Assembly: GCA_965235115.1 (NCBI GenBank)
Contig: OZ249445.1
Location: 9,734,001-9,798,000 of the forward strand
Origin: Laetmonice hystrix
Taxonomy: Eukaryota
Direction: 5' to 3'
DNA length: 64,000 nt
A model generated the notes under the pieces. That model did not search any database. It was given only the letters and a program-made list of their open reading frames with translations, and was not told where the DNA came from. Positions 3,477 through 51,689 of this stretch are shown here, piece by piece (the first letter of the stretch is position 1; each line of letters opens with the position of its first letter). The position numbers and the translations under genes are program-made.

Positions 3477-3963
3477 AAGCGCGTGCTGCGCCCCCACCGT
3501 CAGAGTTGGGAACTGCCTGTCGATAACGAGGCGGCGCAGACGGAAAGCGCCGACAGGGGCGCTCCATTGGACGGCGCCGTGGTCGGCGCGACGCGACCTC
3601 AACGTGACTGGGCGCACAACGCGGCGTCTCCCGCCGTGCCACGCGTTCTCTCGGCTGCCATCGTTCAGGCTAGCCGACCATAAAACACACTGAAACGATT
3701 CTCCAGCGAAACGAAACAATCCACAATGTAATGCTCTGGTGTCTCTTGTAATGTTTTAATGCTAAAAAGGTTTATTCCTGTCTACAGAAAGGAGTAGCGT
3801 GCGGAATGGCAGGAATGAGAACCCTGAACCCTGAGTTGTGGTGACGTCAGGGACTTTTGGATGGAGGATGGTGTTGAATAACTTGAAGGTCTATGCTTCT
3901 TCTCAAGGTGACGTGACGTAATATACCCAACTCCGAGATTAACTCCGTAGAGAATCGTCGAAG
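3477..3963 (+). promoter_or_regulatory. Candidate promoter/5'UTR of the nAChR gene (CpG-rich patch, CRE motifs, possible 5'UTR acceptor)
   Basis: CpG/GC-rich patch about 3477-3710 with reverse CCAAT (ATTGG about 3566); TGACGTCA 3842-49, TGACGTGA/TGACGTAA 3909-21; acceptor-like TTTATTCCTGTCTACAG| ending 3787. TSS not determinable. Confidence 0.4.
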
Positions 3964-4045
3964 ATGGAAGTGTTCTTCTCACAAAGTACTATATGCTGGC
4001 GACAACGCTACCTGCTGCTCTACCTGGCAGTTCTTGTGACCACAG
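3964..4045 (+). CDS. nAChR coding exon 1: signal peptide MEVFFSQSTICWRQRYLLLYLAVLVTT(V)
   Basis: ATG in AAGATGG context, basic residues then hydrophobic core, strong donor ACAG|GTAAGT at 4046, phase 1, matching the phase-1 acceptor of exon 2 (G+TT=Val). Linkage across 25 kb is inferred; no better signal-peptide exon was seen nearer exon 2. Confidence 0.7.
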
Positions 4046-27046: not shown

Positions 27047-27180
27047 NNNNNNNNNNNNNNNNNNNNNNNNNNNNNNNNNNNNNNNNNNNNNNNNNNNNNN
27101 NNNNNNNNNNNNNNNNNNNNNNNNNNNNNNNNNNNNNNNNNNNNNNNNNNNNNNNNNNNNNNNNNNNNNNNNNNNNNNNN
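27047..27180. other. Assembly gap (134 N)
   Basis: Run of N; true length unknown. Confidence 1.
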
Positions 27181-29072
27181 CACATGCGTGCGCACAGATA
27201 CAGAGAGTGGACCGAAGCTCTTGAATATTCTCGACTTTCTGAGTCTCGACGGGAGACCGATAAAGTGGCCGACAACGCATCCATATCGACATACCACGAG
27301 AATAAATCCACAGCACACAGTCATAACACATTCACCTACCTTGTTCACACTGGCCTCATTGGTAACTCAGGGCTGACCGCAACCGTTCATGATAGAGGCA
27401 GAGTCTCGATAGACTTTGGTGATTAATCGAATATATTTACGTAAGGCTGCCAATATCGCGCAGTAAACCATTCGTTAGGGTGCTTTGATGCTGCATTAAC
27501 GTTAACCGCGCCATTGAACCATTGCGGTACACAGAGTGTGCAGGGTCAAAGGTATCACATTGTCTGCTAAATCACCCATCTCCCAGGACGAGACGCCATG
27601 CTGGTTTGTTTGGATTTTACTCTTCAACCCAAATTACTGCCAAGTTATGTGCCTGTGTCTGGCGGACTCTACCCCCGCCCGCCCGCCCGCCCAGCCTGCC
27701 GGCCGGATGGCCTGCGGTGGGTGAGCCCAGACATGGTACATGACGTTTTACATCCTCTCAACCAACATCCGGGCTTTTCTGACGGTGTCCAATGACGCCC
27801 ACGGAATGTTGCGAGCTACATAACAATGCTCTTGCTAACGCGCTCTGAATTTCTCATGTAAAGATATTTCTCCCCATATTGCCTTTATATCAGTACAAAA
27901 AAAAATGGAGACTCAAAATCACCCACCAGTACGTATTTCAAGTAGGAACATTCCATATTTAACCGTACTGAATAGGCCGTTGTTCTGGGTTTTTATCACA
28001 ATGTCATACTTGATGTTTGTCTCAGATATTCAAGTCAGATCAAGATAGGAAAGGTGTCGGCAAGACATATCTTGACTTCGTACATTTATCATTGGAACAT
28101 GGCAGATACATGAGAGATAGTACCAATATATATCGTGCCATCTTCGCTTATTATTATTCACACGTGCACTGCTTATCATACTCATGAATGATGTAATGCG
28201 GAATTGCCGAAGGAAAACAAGTGATAAGAAAAGATATAACTAAATAAATCTGACTTCCCGTTTTCTTCACGTTATGTAAAAAACGTGATCGTATTCAGCT
28301 TCTTGTGTGTAGATCTGTAGGAAAGAATGATTAATGGTTCGTCATGTCGGTATCTGAGACGTTAAAGTTTTTACTTTGGCATGATGAGTGAGTTCCTAGG
28401 TGAAGTGAACCTGATAGAATCTGTAGCAAACCATATCGTGCTGGATAGGGCCGTTTGGCCTTGCCGACATGTCTCCGTTTGGAGACGGCTAGTCGGTCCA
28501 AAATCCGGGTCATTCTCGAAACCTCCACTGTAAACGTTACACGAGTCTGGCTCTCCCTGAGCTCCTAGTTATCATCTGGTCATTACCTGTGGATCACGTG
28601 CCACTGGTAAAAGTCAGATGTATGCGATCATATGTCAGACGACAGTGTCAGTCATGAAACGTTTGATATCAGTATTCTCAAGTAGCTAGTATGAAATGGT
28701 GCTCAATATGCAAACTTTAACCAAATGCTAAAAACCATTAGCTGTGGGAATGGTGCATTGAAAGTCAGGGTAAAAGAAAACTCTTTGTGTACAAAGGACG
28801 GAGTTTCCGTGCATGGAGTTTAAGGTGACATTGGGAAATGAGAATGTGCCTGCAGCCTTCTTATCTTTTTCATAAAGTCCATCAGAACCAAAGTCTATTT
28901 CTTGAGTCCATGGTAATTCTAATGTTGACGATGCCAACAAAATGACGATTTTGTTTCCACCGAAACTCTAGAAACCTATAACAAGCAGCACAACTTGGTG
29001 GTGTTTGCTGTGCCGCAGAGTTTTCGCCGTTAAAAGTTGTCTTTACTAATGGCGGATGTTCTTTCATTACAG

Positions 29073-29578
29073 TTATGTGTATTTCGAGTGACAACGAAAC
29101 CGGCACGGAGTCGTTTCATTTGAAACCGGAAGCCAGCTCTGCAGCGCCCCCAAGCGGCGGTGAGACGCTCGCCACGGAGGAGGCCGTAACGTACACACAA
29201 ACAGCGAGGTCGGAATCCCAACAATCCTCGAGGGTCAAAGTTCGTAAAGATGCTTCCAATGATATCACGACGACAGCCGATGATTCTGTAGACGTCTCAT
29301 CGACTGCCGACTATCTCTACAACTCTGAAGACACGATCGAAATCAACGGTACACAATACGTGGCGGTAGACAAAGGGCAGGAACTTACGCTAAGCCGGAC
29401 GAAGAGAAGGAAATCTAGAAACAAAAATGCGAAGAAAAGGGCGTATTCTCATGAATATTATATCAAGAAACTGTTACTTAGGGATCAGTATTACGACAAA
29501 ACAACTCGGCCAGTGAAAAATGATTCGGCAACAACGACGGTCTATGTAGGGATGTCTCTTTATCACATACTAGACACA
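29073..29578 (+). CDS. nAChR coding exon 2: N-terminal extension plus start of ligand-binding domain (..HEYYIKKLLLRDQYYDKTTRPVKNDSATTTVYVGMSLYHILDT)
   Basis: Branch-like TACTAAT (29044-50), acceptor CTTTCATTACAG|, donor ACA|GTAAGT phase 0. Motif L..Y....RP.......V..G.SL..I.D is the canonical nAChR helix-1/beta1. Confidence 0.92.
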
Positions 29579-30257
29579 GTAAGTACGCTTTTAAACCAAA
29601 AATTATCATTATTCCAGTTGCACGCAATATTGGGTTAGATAGGGCCTACTGCAGGAGTTAGTGTTGACACAGAATAAGGAAGGGTCTCTTCCTTATTCCA
29701 GACCTTGAATTAGCTGTTCTTAAACATGTCCTTTGCTTTTGCGATTGTTAACCTTTGAACCCGATTGGCCGAATTTCCGGCCAAAGTACATTTTAAAATA
29801 TACCGAATGGCCGGTTTTCCCGCCAGCTCATTAAGCTTAATTTAATGGCCAGAAAAAAAGGCCAGGTATATAGAAAAATGATGAAAAATGCTTCAGGGTT
29901 CAAAGGGATGAATCGAAGAATTGGTCTTTTAACCCATGCTTTACCAAAGATATCCCAGTAAGGCGTCAGCTGCCGACTGTCGTGTTTATGACGTCATATG
30001 ATCTCTAACGAGCTCCGCATGCACTCGTACGTACACGTCTGACACACCGCAACAACGGAAACCGTTCGTGCCGCGCGCTTCCGTGTTCATAATGGGTTGG
30101 GCTCAAAATCCCACATGCACTTTAAACATTATAATGTGATCTTTTTATTGTTGAGTTTGGTAAAAGGGCCGTACCTTCAGAAAACCTGCAGGAAACAAGG
30201 AGTAGGGCTTGCGGACAGCTGCTCCCCCCGAGAATTACCCCAGTATGTAAAAGTATA

Positions 30258-30430
30258 CAGGGTGTCCCAAAAGAAATGTCCAGGCCAAACCAGGCAACCT
30301 CAGAATCTATGTTTCCCCAGAACCTGATGGGGAATCTTCTTACAAGAGAAGTAGTCTTTAGTGTATCAAAATCGGTCAAGCGAATCAAAAGTTATATCAT
30401 TTTCGGCGCGTCAAGGCCAGATCTCAACTT
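30258..30430. mobile_element. Single terminus/fragment of a mariner-like DNA transposon
   Basis: TA|CAGGGTGTCCCAAAA terminus and AAAATCGGTCAAG subterminal motif; partner end not found. Confidence 0.5.
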
Positions 30431-32196
30431 GCATGGAGTGATTGACTGTGTGACTTTTTTTTCATTGCAGTTTCTTTCCTTTCTTTATTGTTTTTTTTTT
30501 CATTATTCTTAATACTTTTTGCTCTTTTCTTTATTTGCAATTACGATTATCATTTACAATTTTTTTCTTTTCTCTTTTTATTATGAACATTAACATTAAC
30601 ATCACTTTTAATGACATTTCATTCACCACCTGCCCGTCCTTCCACCAGTTTCGACCATAAAGACACGCTGCTCAGTTATGAACTGTTGGCCAACCATCTT
30701 GGCCATGCATATACACAATGTGGAAAAAATGATATCAAAGAAAAACTACGGCCAGTGATCAGGCTATTGACAAATCCTAAACTGGGCGGCAAGTTCTTGT
30801 TCTCAGATCAGATCTGGTTCAAGTATGTGCATTTAAATACATGGGTATAGGTCCATCACAGTCATTGTTGGCCTTATATTGTGGTCGCAGTTTCCACACA
30901 CAGTGTATGGCGCAACAGAAAGACCATTCTGATAGTTTGGTCTGGCGGCGGGGGGGGGGGGGGGGGGCTTGAGGCTCGTTAACCTTTACAAAACTGCTAG
31001 CACAATATTGTTTAAATAAAAGCTGAAGTGGTTGAGCTTTGTGTACAGTTAGAATTATGTTAAGATGGTTGCACGGGGCCAATCTTCATAGTAACAACGC
31101 TTTCAAGTACACGTACAGCTGTATCGGTACGTATTTCGCTGGCTGTTTGCACGCAATAGAGGGGCGGAGGGTTGTAGGGCCAGGCGATCACCTTCAGAGA
31201 CAATCATACACACCTTACCTGTCTGCCAACCACAACGAGCCAGTACGGCAGAGATCTAAAGAGGACCCCCAGGTAGTATTGCCATCAGGAGATCCCATTG
31301 CATTATATACAAAGAACCCGAATTATGCAGTGTTTTCTTCCATCTCTGCATCTTGGCACCGAAAAAAGGAGACCCACAACTTATACTACGTAAACAAAAC
31401 AAGGAGCTTAAATTGCCGTGAAAAAAAATCAATAATTAACAGACAAAGAAGTCCATATAACCACAAGAATGTAGTTCGATCATCGCTTACGGGAAGAGTT
31501 TCAAACTTAAGATTATCTAGAGAAGCTCTCCAAGTTGACCTTGGAAACGATACTCAGTTTGCAGTTTGATGGAGACTGAACGAATTGGCGCCATTACTAT
31601 CATCGAAGGTTTGGAGAGAAAAGCTCGGATTACTTCTGAAGAGCGAGACAATCAAAGAAAGAAACACAAAACGAGAAGACGAACGTTGTAAGTTAATGTA
31701 TATAGGGAGCCCAAGAGTCTGCGCTTTGAAGAGACTGCATGGGGGACGTAATTCATAAGCTTTAGGTAGTGCTTCCACCAGCATACTTGGAACCACGCAT
31801 GCGCTGTGGCTTTGCGTTTTGCACAGAAAACTGACGCATAGTGACAAGTAATCAGCGCGGTACATGGACGGCCGAGTGGCAGCTTATCGTCGGCCTGATG
31901 GAGGCCCGAAACAAGCGTGGATCCCGCCTGCCCATGGCGCCTCAAGGTATGAACGCCACATGTGAGCGTACAAAGGAGCCGCTCAGGCACGGCGACGCCT
32001 CATTACCTGTAGCGCCTCGTTTGCATATTGTGAACCCCACCGGCACTGGTGCACTAACAACATATCTCGCCCACTGTGACGCGGTTTCCAATCCACAGTC
32101 GCAGCAACCGATGGATGCCGATGTAGCCGCATAGTTTAACATGTTTATATAAACTTACTCCATGTATTGCATATGTAAAAAAAACTATAGAATCTC

Positions 32197-40763: not shown

Positions 40764-40808
40764 AATGAAAAGTATCAGACATTATCTGCCCTCATTGCTG
40801 TCAGATTG
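40764..40808 (+). CDS. nAChR coding exon 3 (45 nt, NEKYQTLSALIAVRL)
   Basis: Acceptor TTTTCTCGGTTACAG|, donor TTG|GTAAGT, phase 0-0. Equivalent to the conserved 45-nt DEKNQVLTTNIWLQM exon of nAChRs; not in the ORF track. Confidence 0.9.
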
Positions 40809-45013: not shown

Positions 45014-45123
45014 AGATGGATTGACGACTTCCTACGCTGGGACCCAGCCCGCTACGGTGGAGTGGACCACGTGTGGGTGCCGGCCATGGACATTTGGAGG
45101 CCCGACATCTTCATCAACAATTT
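45014..45123 (+). CDS. nAChR coding exon 4 (110 nt, RWIDDFLRWDPARYGGVDHVWVPAMDIWRPDIFINN)
   Basis: W.D..L.W.P..YGG...........IW.PDI motif; acceptor ..CCTGGGTAG|, donor TT|GTAAGT, phase 0-2; same 110-nt size as the conserved nAChR exon. Confidence 0.95.
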
Positions 45124-46199: not shown

Positions 46200-46738
46200 T
46201 GCTGACGACAGTTTCCAAGACTTCATGAACACGTTTACCATCGTGTCGTACGACGGTTCGGTCCTGTGGATGTTCCCGGCCGTCGTGAAGACATACTGCA
46301 CGCTCGACGTACGCCATTTCCCGTTTGATCGTCAAAAATGCAACATTATCTTCATCTCATGGACATTCAACGGATTCAAACTGAACGTGACGTACAACGT
46401 GAGCGAACACAATACCGTGTACTACACGCCCAAGAATCAAGAGTGGTACGTGGATGAGATTGGGGTGGCACGTCATGAGAAAATATACGCTTGTTGCATA
46501 GAGCCGTACCCTGACGTGACGTTCAGTATACACATGACGCGACGTAGCTTGTTCTACATTATCAACCTTATCTTTCCCTGTCTGCTCATCTATGCTGTGT
46601 CCTTCCTTGGCTTCTTTTTACCGGTCGAATCGGGAGAGAAGGTGAACTTGGAGATTACCATTTTATTGGCTCTTGTCGTGTTCTTGCTGATTGTCGGGGA
46701 GACTTTGCCGCCCACACCGGACGCCATTCCCGCGCTAG
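46200..46738 (+). CDS. nAChR coding exon 5: Cys-loop, loops B/C, M1, M2, M2-M3 linker
   Basis: ORF 46177..46770; acceptor TTTCCCACTTCAG|, donor CTAG|GTACGT phase 1; CTLDVRHFPFDRQKC, SWTFNG, YACCIEPYPD (vicinal Cys = alpha type), SGEKVNLEITILLALVVFLLIVGETLP. Confidence 0.97.
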
Positions 46739-48138: not shown

Positions 48139-48590
48139 GTGTTCTCTTTGGAACGACCATGCTCATGGTGTCAATCGCGCTGGTAATGGCCGTCATCGTC
48201 ACAAACATATTCCTACGCAAAGACTCTGGACATCGAGTACCTGTTTGCCTCCGGAAAATCTTTATCGGGAAGTCACAGAGGAGTTCTCTATCTAACAAGG
48301 TCACCCACACCGAGAATCACGTTCTCGAGAGTAAAATACAGGAAATCGAAATCGACAATCTCTCCAACCACAGTGAGGCTGAAACCTTGACCTGTAGGAG
48401 TCGCTGTAGTCGCAAGCGATCGGGGACGCCATACAAGGTGAACGACCTTGACTTACACGTCCGCATTTCTCACGAATGGCAAGTGTTGGCCAAGTGCGTC
48501 GATCGTGCATTTTTCTGGCTATTTCTTGCTTCTAGTGTCGCCGCCTTGACATCAATGTTCCTTCAAGTTCCGGCATACAATGCAACGTAA
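48139..48590 (+). CDS. nAChR coding exon 6: M3, ~90-aa intracellular loop, MA helix, M4, stop
   Basis: ORF 48117..48590; acceptor CTTGCTCTTTACAG| phase 1; VLFGTTMLMVSIALVMAVIVTNIF (M3), EWQVLAKCVDRAFFWLF (MA-M4); TAA 48588-90. Confidence 0.95.
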
Positions 48591-50448: not shown

Positions 50449-50648
50449 AAATATACTGGTATATCCATCAAATATACTGGTATATCCATCAAATATACTG
50501 GTATATAATATACTGGTATATAATATACTAGTATATCCATCAAATATACTAGTATATCCATCAAATATACTGGTATATCCATCAAATATACTGGTATATC
50601 CATCAAATTTACTGGTATATCCATCAAATTTACTGGTATATCCATCAA
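50449..50648. repeat. Minisatellite, 21 bp unit (14-bp variants), internally palindromic
   Basis: Unit AAATATACTGGTATATCCATC, about 10 units. Confidence 0.95.
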
Positions 50649-51689
50649 GAGACTGCACAAAACAACAACCAGTATCTCAATCCTCGCCGTGCTATTTTTT
50701 AGCACGTCGATAAGTAATGGCCGCAAATATGACCAAAAAATTGGCATCGAAAGTTCGGAATGTAAAAAAACCTGTATTTGTAAACAATCACCGCTTCGGA
50801 CCGAAGAGGAGAGAGAACGCATGGGGCCACTATCAGAAAATTTCGTTATGCTTACCCATATCGATAACATAATGGCTAATGTGAAAATGTTAGTTGAATT
50901 TGGGGTTGGTTGGTTGCTAATACTTAATGTGCCTCTTTAAGGTAAGAGGCTATAAAAGGTAAGGTAGAATGTGTATCATGCCCGTGTAGTTGATAGTTTG
51001 AGGTAGATAGGGCTGGCAGTGTTTAGTCCGGGGTTTTAGGCGGGGCAGGCCGGATGTGGTTAATACACTCAACGTATTTAGAGTCGGCTGCCGGAGTTCG
51101 CCGCGCCACCAGCCCTGATGGCTTGCCATGGTCGCTGTCAGTCACTCCGGCAGAAAGTGAATGGAGAACTCTTGGGGATTCTGCAGCAGAATTCCTCGAT
51201 GAATATCTGTCTGCAGGTGAAAAGATTGATGATACCGTGCCGGAAGGATGACAATTAGTCCTGGCATTTCACGTGATGAAAGATTTGAATGTCAGCCACA
51301 AGGGAACTGCGTTGGGAGTCATAACTCAGGATATTTGTTAGATCTGGTACCTGTTCAAAACAAACGCACAGCTGAAGTTCCCATAGGAAAACTGTATAAA
51401 AAGATACTATGTAGTTCCATTTAGTTGTATGAACTGAATGGAAAGCTACACAGTTCTCGATCCGTGGCAATGTTCGCAATAAATTATGCGTGGTGGACAG
51501 TTCGCATACTTTTATCATCTGTACAGATAATGATAAAAAGATAATCATGCTACATTTGAGGGTAGTTAAAAATTAATGAAAGGGACTGTGATCGTAGTGA
51601 AATTGCACTCCTGGGAAAGGGCCCCTTCTGTGATAAAGTGTAGCCAAGGAAAAAATGTGCAGGCTCAATATTTAAAACCCGCATTAAGT

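What the first reader, a model, noticed from the sequence alone, without database searches (positions are those of the whole stretch)
29073..29440. nAChR subunit with an apparent cleavable pro-domain: ~120-aa acidic extension ending in a polybasic convertase cluster
Seen: between the signal peptide and the first conserved helix, exon 2 encodes about 120 extra residues rich in S/T/D/E/A with sequons NET and NGT, followed by RTKRRKSRNKNAKKR (29396-29440) and then directly AYSHEYYIKKLLL..YDKTTRP, the normal mature N-terminus. Known: RTKR fits the furin consensus R-X-K/R-R, KR is a PC1/PC2-type site, and typical nAChRs start right after signal cleavage (equivalent exon about 140 nt versus 506 nt here). 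Inference: this could be a pro-receptor whose acidic propeptide controls assembly, trafficking or gating until removed, or releases a secreted peptide. I know of proteolytic activation for ENaC but not as an established mode for Cys-loop receptors.
Basis: partly seen in the sequence, partly recalled or inferred. Interest (0 to 1): 0.75.

Follow-up and report, generated by a model that had tools for sequence, protein, structure and literature searches.

The report
Nicotinic-type receptor with conserved cleavable N-terminal extension
An annelid-type worm gene for a nicotinic-receptor-like channel subunit really does carry about 120 extra acidic, disordered residues ahead of the normal start. They end in an R-x-K-R furin-type motif that related worms keep unchanged, so the subunit is probably trimmed by a convertase, which has not been described for this receptor class.

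Summary
Exon 2 (29073-29578) is one open frame. It encodes a 108-residue S/T/D/E-rich stretch (pI 4.1), then RTKRRKSRNKNAKKR, then the usual first helix of a Cys-loop receptor. The six-exon, 577-codon model is coherent.

The extension is real coding sequence:
- 87 relatives from other genomes, one of them named as an annelid, keep the open frame.
- Many show the same layout: acidic block, basic cluster, helix.
- In several, the signal peptide sits in the same frame.
- An annotated annelid protein and a spliced transcript include such extensions.
- dN/dS in the extension of two related species is 0.09.

Within the extension of 11 related sequences, the only invariant columns are R, K and R of S-R-x-K-R, at the boundary between the acidic and basic parts. 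The P3 and P1' positions vary. This pattern fits a furin-type cleavage site. Cleavage would therefore leave a basic tail on the mature receptor. Short-N-terminus relatives have a similar basic stretch, so that tail looks ancestral.

A second group of 26 relatives has the same acid/basic layout but no strict furin motif. Cleavage and its effect are untested. No run on record as RNA covers the gene, so the exon 1/exon 2 junction is also untested.

The parts
3964..4045 (+). Exon 1: start codon and signal peptide (27 codons plus 1 base, phase 1)
   Evidence: Of all ATG-to-donor candidates in the 29 kb upstream of exon 2, this is the only one with a hydrophobic core and a perfect CAG|GTAAGT donor in the right phase. 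The junction to 29073 has no read support.
29073..29395 (+). 5' part of exon 2: acidic, S/T-rich, disordered extension (model residues 28-135), the putative pro-region. Carries sequons NET (29093-29101) and NGT (29345-29353).
   Evidence: Sequence. No Pfam domain. AlphaFold2 pLDDT is mostly below 50. Homologous extensions in other genomes. dN/dS 0.09 in a related species pair.
29396..29407 (+). R-T-K-R (model residues R136-R139): conserved furin-type motif, with the predicted scissile bond after 29407
   Evidence: R108, K110 and R111 (exon-2 numbering) are the only invariant columns within the extension in an 11-sequence alignment; S107 is nearly invariant.
29408..29440 (+). Basic tail RKSRNKNAKKR, which would remain on the mature receptor if cleavage is at RTKR
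   Evidence: Basic stretches precede the helix in relatives that lack an acidic block. The distal dibasic site is not conserved.
29441..29578 (+). 3' part of exon 2: N-terminal helix and start of the ligand-binding domain (AYSHEYYIKK...GMSLYHILDT)
   Evidence: Weak Pfam Neur_chan_LBD match to this part, 18.7 bits against a cut-off of 26. Helix predicted at exon-2 residues 126-139. 60-77% identity to many relatives.
40764..40808 (+). Exon 3 (45 nt, NEKYQTLSALIAVRL)
   Evidence: Matches NEKFQTLSALIAIRL of the Paralvinella protein.
45014..45123 (+). Exon 4 (110 nt)
46200..46738 (+). Exon 5: rest of the ligand-binding domain (Cys-loop, YACC), TM1 and TM2
   Evidence: Pfam PF02931 at 7e-27 and PF02932 at 4e-15.
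48139..48590 (+). Exon 6: TM3, cytoplasmic loop, TM4 and stop codon
   Evidence: Pfam PF02932 at 7e-12.

Best explanation
This is an intact alpha-type nicotinic-receptor-like (Cys-loop) subunit gene, most likely from an annelid. Its exon 2 has grown to encode a disordered, acidic, glycosylatable N-terminal extension between the signal peptide and the first helix of the extracellular domain.

The layout is S/T-rich segment, acidic block, basic cluster, helix. It is shared by the corresponding gene of many other worm genomes and is under purifying selection (shown).

In the lineage that includes this genome, the acid/basic boundary carries an invariant S-R-x-K-R. The most likely mechanism (inferred) has these steps:
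- The signal peptide is removed and the extension is glycosylated in the ER and Golgi.
- A furin-like proprotein convertase cuts after R-T-K-R (after base 29407) in the late secretory pathway.
- This removes an acidic pro-piece of about 110 residues, net charge about -12.
- The mature subunit keeps a short, strongly basic tail in front of helix 1, at the rim of the channel vestibule.

The acidic pro-piece probably masks the basic tail until late in the pathway, so cleavage would switch the charge at the top of the pentamer. What that changes (assembly, export, matrix anchoring or conductance) is unknown.
For: Gene model and sequence. One search finds a unique signal-peptide exon candidate.

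The extension is coding:
- 87 phmmer hits are mostly exon-2 open frames from other genomes with long upstream extensions.
- The signal peptide is contiguous with the extension in P0006, P0031, P0016 and P0040.
- The annotated Paralvinella palmiformis protein KAK2168105.1 includes the extension spliced to downstream exons, and is 80% identical to this gene's core.
- The spliced transcript L005 carries a signal peptide, an extension of about 110 aa and the helix.
- Two related assemblies show no indel in 600 nt of the exon, against indel-rich flanks. dS is 0.41 and dN/dS is 0.09 in the extension.

The motif:
- R, K and R of S-R-x-K-R are the only invariant extension columns in 11 sequences.
- 11 of 12 clade members have R-x-[KR]-R at the acid/basic boundary. 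Across all 38 sequences analysed, shuffling predicts about 2.3 with the motif.
- P3 varies (T, K, I, E, Q, Y, P) and P1' varies (R, G, A).

Context:
- The region is predicted disordered, hence accessible.
- The genome encodes several proprotein-convertase P-domains.
- No plausible internal acceptor would skip the site.
- Run X4, of unrecorded kind, holds 29216-29516 as colinear sequence and nothing from the flanking introns.
Against: - No protein-level evidence of cleavage exists.
- No run on record as RNA holds the exon, and the 4045/29073 junction is unverified.
- 26 other relatives share the acid/basic layout but have no strict R-x-[KR]-R, and only 14 of the 26 have even a loose furin-type site. 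The conserved function of the extension therefore cannot depend on a strict furin site everywhere.
- The own-genome searches suggest these relatives are the same gene in other lineages rather than a paralog.
- Basic stretches before the helix also occur in relatives with no pro-region.
- A conserved basic motif could serve binding rather than cleavage.
Confidence: 0.5

Rival explanations
1. The extension is a permanent, uncleaved part of the mature receptor. It would be a disordered polyampholyte (acidic block plus basic cluster, possibly O-glycosylated or Tyr-sulfated) that anchors or spaces the receptor in the extracellular matrix, or tunes local ion concentration at the vestibule. In this reading S-R-x-K-R is conserved as a binding motif, for example for sulfated glycans or for the receptor's own acidic block.
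For: The acid/basic layout is conserved in 26 relatives without a strict furin motif. Basic stretches occur in relatives without any pro-region. Some extensions contain mucin-like PTS repeats (P0016; L005). Purifying selection acts on the whole extension, not only on the motif.
Against: Simple charge-based binding would tolerate K/R exchange and positional drift. Instead P4 R, P2 K and P1 R are invariant while P3 and P1' vary freely. From established knowledge of furin specificity, an exposed R-x-K-R in a disordered luminal segment is normally a good substrate.
Confidence: 0.3
2. Cleavage occurs, but at the distal dibasic site directly before AYSHEYY (KKR|A). That would give a 'normal' mature N-terminus and remove the whole basic cluster.
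For: KR is present at 29435-29440. P0001 has a similar RKR|V.
Against: The residues directly before the helix are not conserved as a dibasic site. Examples are QVRL|FS, KKGK|FS, SGKG|FS, DFMD|YS and QLDG|YS. Several relatives have a 35-50 aa Gly-rich spacer after the conserved motif.
Confidence: 0.08
3. The extension is a gene-model artefact. Mature mRNA would use another first exon or acceptor, and the open frame upstream of the helix would not be translated.
For: No RNA run on record covers the exon. The exon 1/exon 2 junction spans a 25-kb intron and was not observed.
Against: - The open frame is kept in dozens of genomes.
- The signal peptide is contiguous with it in several of them.
- An annotated protein and a spliced transcript include such extensions.
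- dN/dS is 0.09 and the exon has no indels.
- No usable internal acceptor exists.

Confidence: 0.04

Closest known systems
Alpha7/alpha9/alpha10-like nicotinic acetylcholine receptor subunits (Cys-loop pLGICs); spiralian 'alpha-9/10-like' orthologs in Owenia, Lineus, Tubulanus and Lingula
   Same: Same six-exon core. It has the Neur_chan_LBD and Neur_chan_memb domains, the Cys-loop, the vicinal Cys pair, a GEK cation-type M2 and four TM segments. The core is 62-80% identical to these proteins.
   Different: Those proteins start a few to about 55 residues before helix 1, and none of them has an acidic block. This gene has about 123 residues there, with an acidic pro-region and an invariant R-x-K-R.
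ENaC alpha/gamma subunits (furin-activated channels; from general knowledge)
   Same: A channel subunit with polybasic convertase sites in its extracellular region, whose cleavage changes channel behaviour. Some relatives here (P0007, P0011, P0019, P0030) even have two basic clusters flanking a spacer.
   Different: The protein family and fold are unrelated. In ENaC two cuts release an internal inhibitory tract, whereas here a single conserved site would remove an N-terminal pro-piece. No functional data exist for this gene.
Drosophila Neto, an iGluR auxiliary subunit whose inhibitory prodomain is removed by furin (PMC4344203; title and abstract seen)
   Same: Convertase removal of an N-terminal prodomain as a step that controls synaptic receptor complexes.
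   Different: Neto is an auxiliary CUB-domain protein, not the channel subunit, and belongs to a different receptor class.
Alvinella pompejana Cys-loop receptors. Alv-a1-pHCl/Alpo7 has a 37-residue pre-helix N-terminus reported to alter gating (Juneja et al. 2014, recalled from memory; the paper is cited in PMC4801368). Alv-a9/Alpo1 is an orphan.
   Same: Annelid Cys-loop receptors in which residues ahead of helix 1 matter, or whose ligand is unknown.
   Different: Alpo7 is an anion channel with a short, non-acidic extension, and no cleavage is reported. Whether Alpo1 belongs to this orthogroup was not tested.

Membership tests
Cys-loop receptor / nAChR subunit | Neurotransmitter-gated ion-channel ligand-binding domain and transmembrane region | tested here: met
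   Pfam PF02931 at 7e-27 and PF02932 at 4e-15 and 7e-12 on exons 5 and 6. The best solved relative is alpha7 nAChR, E 1e-45.
Cys-loop receptor / nAChR subunit | Cys-loop (C-x13-C) and four TM segments | tested here: met
   C-TLDVRHFPFDRQK-C, TM1-TM4 and the GEK/ETLP M2 borders are read directly from the model.
alpha-type nAChR subunit | Vicinal cysteines in loop C | tested here: met
   YACC in exon 5.
ACh-gated nAChR | Complete aromatic box for acetylcholine | not tested
   Exon 3 has R where loop D usually has W. Another note of this scan (s1-349285) addresses this, and it was not evaluated here.
Furin/proprotein-convertase substrate (proprotein) | R-X-K/R-R motif | tested here: met
   RTKR at 29396-29407.
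Furin/proprotein-convertase substrate (proprotein) | Motif conserved at P4, P2 and P1 in relatives | tested here: met
   Invariant R, K and R in 11 sequences, with variable P3 and P1'. The motif is absent from a second group of 26 relatives.
Furin/proprotein-convertase substrate (proprotein) | Site lies in the secretory lumen (signal peptide upstream) and is accessible | tested here: met
   Signal-peptide exon and contiguous signal peptides in relatives. Disordered context, pLDDT about 50-62. The exon 1/exon 2 junction itself was not observed.
Furin/proprotein-convertase substrate (proprotein) | Convertase present in the organism | tested here: met
   8 P_proprotein (PF01483) matches above the cut-off in the same genome, some of them adjacent exons of one gene.
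Furin/proprotein-convertase substrate (proprotein) | Cleavage actually occurs | not testable with these tools
   Needs protein biochemistry or proteomics.
ENaC-type proteolytically activated channel | Two cleavages that release an inhibitory tract and raise open probability | tested here: inconclusive
   Only one conserved site. The second basic cluster in some relatives is not a strict motif. No functional data.

The most novel reading that the evidence does not exclude
This would be the first Cys-loop receptor made as a pro-receptor. A furin-type convertase would remove a conserved acidic N-terminal pro-piece and unmask a polybasic tail at the vestibule rim. That cut would control assembly, surface delivery, matrix anchoring or conductance of a highly conserved spiralian orphan channel.
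Probability: 0.3. Interest if true: 0.8.

Novelty: new variant of a known kind. Interest (0 to 1): 0.6.

Why it matters
Cys-loop receptors are textbook channels whose mature subunit begins right after the signal peptide. In six searches of the held paper library, three of them aimed at this question, I found no report of convertase processing of their extracellular domain.

Here a receptor whose core is 68-80% identical across annelids and nemerteans carries a fast-evolving but selected N-terminal extension. Within that extension, the only invariant residues in 11 species-level sequences spell a furin site.

This gives a precise, cheap test: mutate two arginines, or block convertases, and compare protein size, surface expression and currents. 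It may also explain why annelid orphans of this type stay silent in heterologous systems that may not process them correctly. If the motif is not cleaved, the conserved acid/basic extension is still an undescribed extracellular module on a nicotinic-type receptor.

Tried and rejected
- RNA support: the look-up of sequencing runs returned four runs from one sample, none on record as RNA. In read laying, X1-X3 proved to be genomic, because their contigs run through the exon/intron borders. X4, of unknown kind, holds only 29216-29516. That is suggestive of RNA but is not proof, and it says nothing about the junction.
- The stretch 3900-29600 is too long to lay in one call, so the 4045/29073 joint could not be examined.
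- DNA for the closest relative P0001 could not be fetched because the file was too large. The dN/dS test was therefore done on another pair of the same clade (L009 and L010).
- Pfam found no domain in the extension. AlphaFold2 gave only a weak hairpin at IEINGTQYVAV and disorder elsewhere, so a folded prodomain is rejected.
- A strict furin motif across the whole family is rejected: 0 of 26 in the EYR/EYQ-type group. The looser rule (P1 R plus two of P2, P4, P6 basic) is met in only 14 of 26.
- An internal acceptor that skips the extension is rejected. The only in-phase AG with a weak pyrimidine tract is at 29331. It is still upstream of the motif, and an X4 contig spans it.
- Alternative signal-peptide exons: none is comparable.
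- Literature: three searches on furin, convertase or prodomain terms with Cys-loop, pLGIC or nAChR terms found nothing relevant. A fourth search, on disordered or long N-terminal regions of invertebrate Cys-loop receptors, also found nothing. The Juneja 2014 paper is not held.
- The full 577-aa model could not be sent to the remote search or fold tools, because a spliced protein has no reference. Only single exons were used there.

Full report
**1. Observation**

The frame holding 29075 is stop-free from 28982 to 29635. Exon 2 is bounded by a good acceptor (ttctttcattacag|TT at 29073) and a consensus donor (ACA|gtaagt after 29578).

After the exon-1 residues, the translation runs in this order:
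- 108 residues with 16 S, 14 T, 9 D, 10 E and 10 A, pI 4.1, with sequons NET and NGT;
- RTKRRKSRNKNAKKR at 29396-29440;
- AYSHEYYIKKLLLRDQYYDKTTRPV..., the usual first helix.

I rebuilt the whole gene by hand. The exons are 3964-4045, 29073-29578, 40764-40808, 45014-45123, 46200-46738 and 48139-48590. All have canonical splice sites, phases that fit, and a total of 577 codons. Pfam places Neur_chan_LBD and Neur_chan_memb on exons 5 and 6, and finds nothing in the extension. The nearest solved relative is alpha7 nAChR.

Exon 1 encodes a plausible signal peptide. Of all ATG-to-donor candidates in the 29 kb upstream, it is the only one that combines a hydrophobic core with a perfect CAG|GTAAGT donor in phase 1.

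**2. Is the extension really coding?**

A phmmer search of the 168 exon-2 residues against 1.84 billion representatives gave 87 hits. Nearly all are short open frames called on genomic contigs of other organisms. The 24 I fetched all end ...GMSL(Y/F)HIL(D/N)TV..., which is exon 2 plus read-through into the intron.

Their upstream parts are long, 60 to 280 residues. They repeat one layout: an S/T/P-rich segment, a poly-D/E block (up to 23 acidic residues in 30), a basic cluster (8-13 K/R in the last 40 residues in nearly all with a long extension), then (Y/F)SxEYxIK.

Further points:
- One cluster member is named: Paralvinella palmiformis KAK2168105.1, from an annelid. Its annotated model splices the extension to NEKFQTLSALIAIRLRW....
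- The core of the window gene is 80% identical to that protein. It is 72% identical to an Owenia protein and 68-70% identical to nemertean proteins.
- In P0006, P0031, P0016 and P0040 a hydrophobic signal peptide lies in the same open frame, directly ahead of the extension.
- A spliced Logan transcript (L005) encodes a signal peptide, an extension of about 110 residues, the helix and ...LDT|NEK....
- Two related assemblies (L009, L010) differ by 8% in the exon without a single indel over 600 nt, while the flanks are full of indels. dS is 0.41. dN/dS is 0.09 over the extension and 0.05 over its acidic plus basic part, against 0.10 in the conserved helix part.
- No usable internal acceptor would skip the extension.

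The extension is therefore a translated, selected part of the protein.

**3. Read evidence**

No run on record as RNA holds the exon. Runs X1-X3 are genomic, because their contigs run through both exon borders. Run X4 is of unknown kind and holds 58 Mb of contigs. It contains only 29216-29516, which covers the extension, the basic cluster and the helix as colinear sequence. It has nothing from 1.9 kb of upstream intron or 0.65 kb of downstream intron. This fits a transcript but does not prove one, and the 4045/29073 junction remains unobserved.

**4. The basic cluster**

I aligned the window with ten relatives whose helix reads EYY, EYF or EYK: P0001, P0002, P0003, P0007, P0011, P0016, P0019, P0030, P0040 and P0042.
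- Apart from the called start methionine, the only invariant columns upstream of the helix are R108, K110 and R111 in exon-2 numbering. S107 is nearly invariant.
- The motif reads (L)S-R-x-K-R and sits exactly at the end of the acidic block.
- P3 varies (T, K, I, E, Q, Y, P) and P1' varies (R, G, A).
- Eleven of twelve members of this group have R-x-[KR]-R there. Shuffling the last 75 residues predicts about 2.3 occurrences across all 38 sequences analysed.

Invariant P4, P2 and P1 with free P3 and P1' is what recognition by a furin-type convertase predicts. A charge patch would not show it. This step rests on established knowledge of furin specificity and is an inference.

The site lies in a region that AlphaFold2 leaves disordered. 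The genome also encodes several convertase P-domains.

The distal KKR next to AYSHEYY is not conserved. Several relatives have a 35-50-residue Gly-rich basic spacer between the motif and the helix. If cleavage occurs, it is therefore after RTKR. The mature subunit would keep a basic tail, RKSRNKNAKKR in this gene.

**5. What weakens the pro-receptor reading**

- A second group of 26 relatives (helix mostly EYR, EYQ or EYH) has the same acidic block and basic cluster but no strict furin motif. Many share instead D-x-M-Q-x-D-F/Y and SKGGKK-like runs, and only 14 of 26 pass even a loose furin rule.
- In the window's genome the best match to such a protein is this same gene. The only other close match is the short paralog. 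The core also groups with the Paralvinella gene. The two types are therefore probably the same gene in different lineages. If so, the conserved role of the extension does not require a strict furin site everywhere.
- Relatives with little or no extension still carry a basic stretch just before the helix. Examples are Tubulanus, Lineus, Owenia and the paralog 72 kb downstream, SRSARPKSKIVRSNEYKIK. The basic tail therefore looks ancestral and the acidic block looks like a later addition that may mask it.

**6. Mechanism, verdict and novelty**

- Shown: the gene is intact, the extension is coding and selected, and the R-x-K-R is conserved within its clade.
- Inferred: luminal exposure, glycosylation, a furin-type cut after base 29407, release or non-covalent retention of an acidic pro-piece, and a basic tail at the vestibule rim.
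- Unknown: the functional consequence.

My odds are about 0.5 for cleavage at RTKR, about 0.3 for an uncleaved polyampholyte extension and about 0.04 for an artefact.

In six searches of the held library I found no report of convertase processing of a Cys-loop receptor. The nearest functional analogies are ENaC (from general knowledge) and furin removal of the Neto prodomain (PMC4344203, seen). Among annelid receptors, Alv-a1-pHCl has a short pre-helix segment reported to change gating. I recall that from memory; the paper is cited in PMC4801368 but is not held here.

I class the finding as a new variant of a known kind.

Noticed in passing
L002:1490-1659 (G000:C11, about 72 kb downstream of this gene, outside the window): The closest paralog has a normal-size exon 2 of about 170 nt. 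It encodes a short basic pre-helix segment with no acidic extension. Its next exon reads NEKEQTFTSLLAIRQ.
   Followed up: partly
window 40764-40808: Exon 3 reads NEKYQTLSALIAVRL, with R where most nAChRs have the loop-D tryptophan. The same change is in the Paralvinella and Owenia relatives. This fits the scan's separate note on a reduced aromatic box.
   Followed up: no
window exons 3-5, against P0096 and P0097 (nemerteans) and P0103 (Lingula): The receptor core is unusually conserved for a spiralian orphan. It is 68-70% identical to nemertean proteins and 62% to a brachiopod protein over 234 residues, while the N-terminus ranges from about 5 to about 280 residues.
   Followed up: partly
window 3842-3849 and 3907-3926: A palindromic TGACGTCA and a GGTGACGTGACGTAATATA stretch (CRE-like plus TATA-like) lie 40-120 nt upstream of the start codon. 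They may be the promoter.
   Followed up: no
window 29712-29979 and 30248-30783: Intron 2 holds repeats with very high summed contig depth in the DNA runs, hundreds to thousands against about 40-50 elsewhere. They are presumably transposable elements.
   Followed up: no
window 27047-27180: A run of 134 N in intron 1, which is an assembly gap or a masked stretch. It was left alone.
   Followed up: no
window about 50460-50660: A tandem repeat downstream of the gene translates as YTGISIK / YTSISIK units, so the period is about 21 nt.
   Followed up: no
P0016 residues about 45-175; L005:174-1994 (residues about 95-115): Some relatives' extensions contain mucin-like repeats: PEVKPRSTTS(A/V)APP units in P0016 and an S4-T4-P7 run in L005. 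This suggests heavy O-glycosylation of these N-termini.
   Followed up: no
window 29336-29368 (IEINGTQYVAV): AlphaFold2 predicts a small beta-hairpin (pLDDT about 57-62) around the NGT sequon, just upstream of the basic cluster. The segment is conserved in P0001 and P0002.
   Followed up: no
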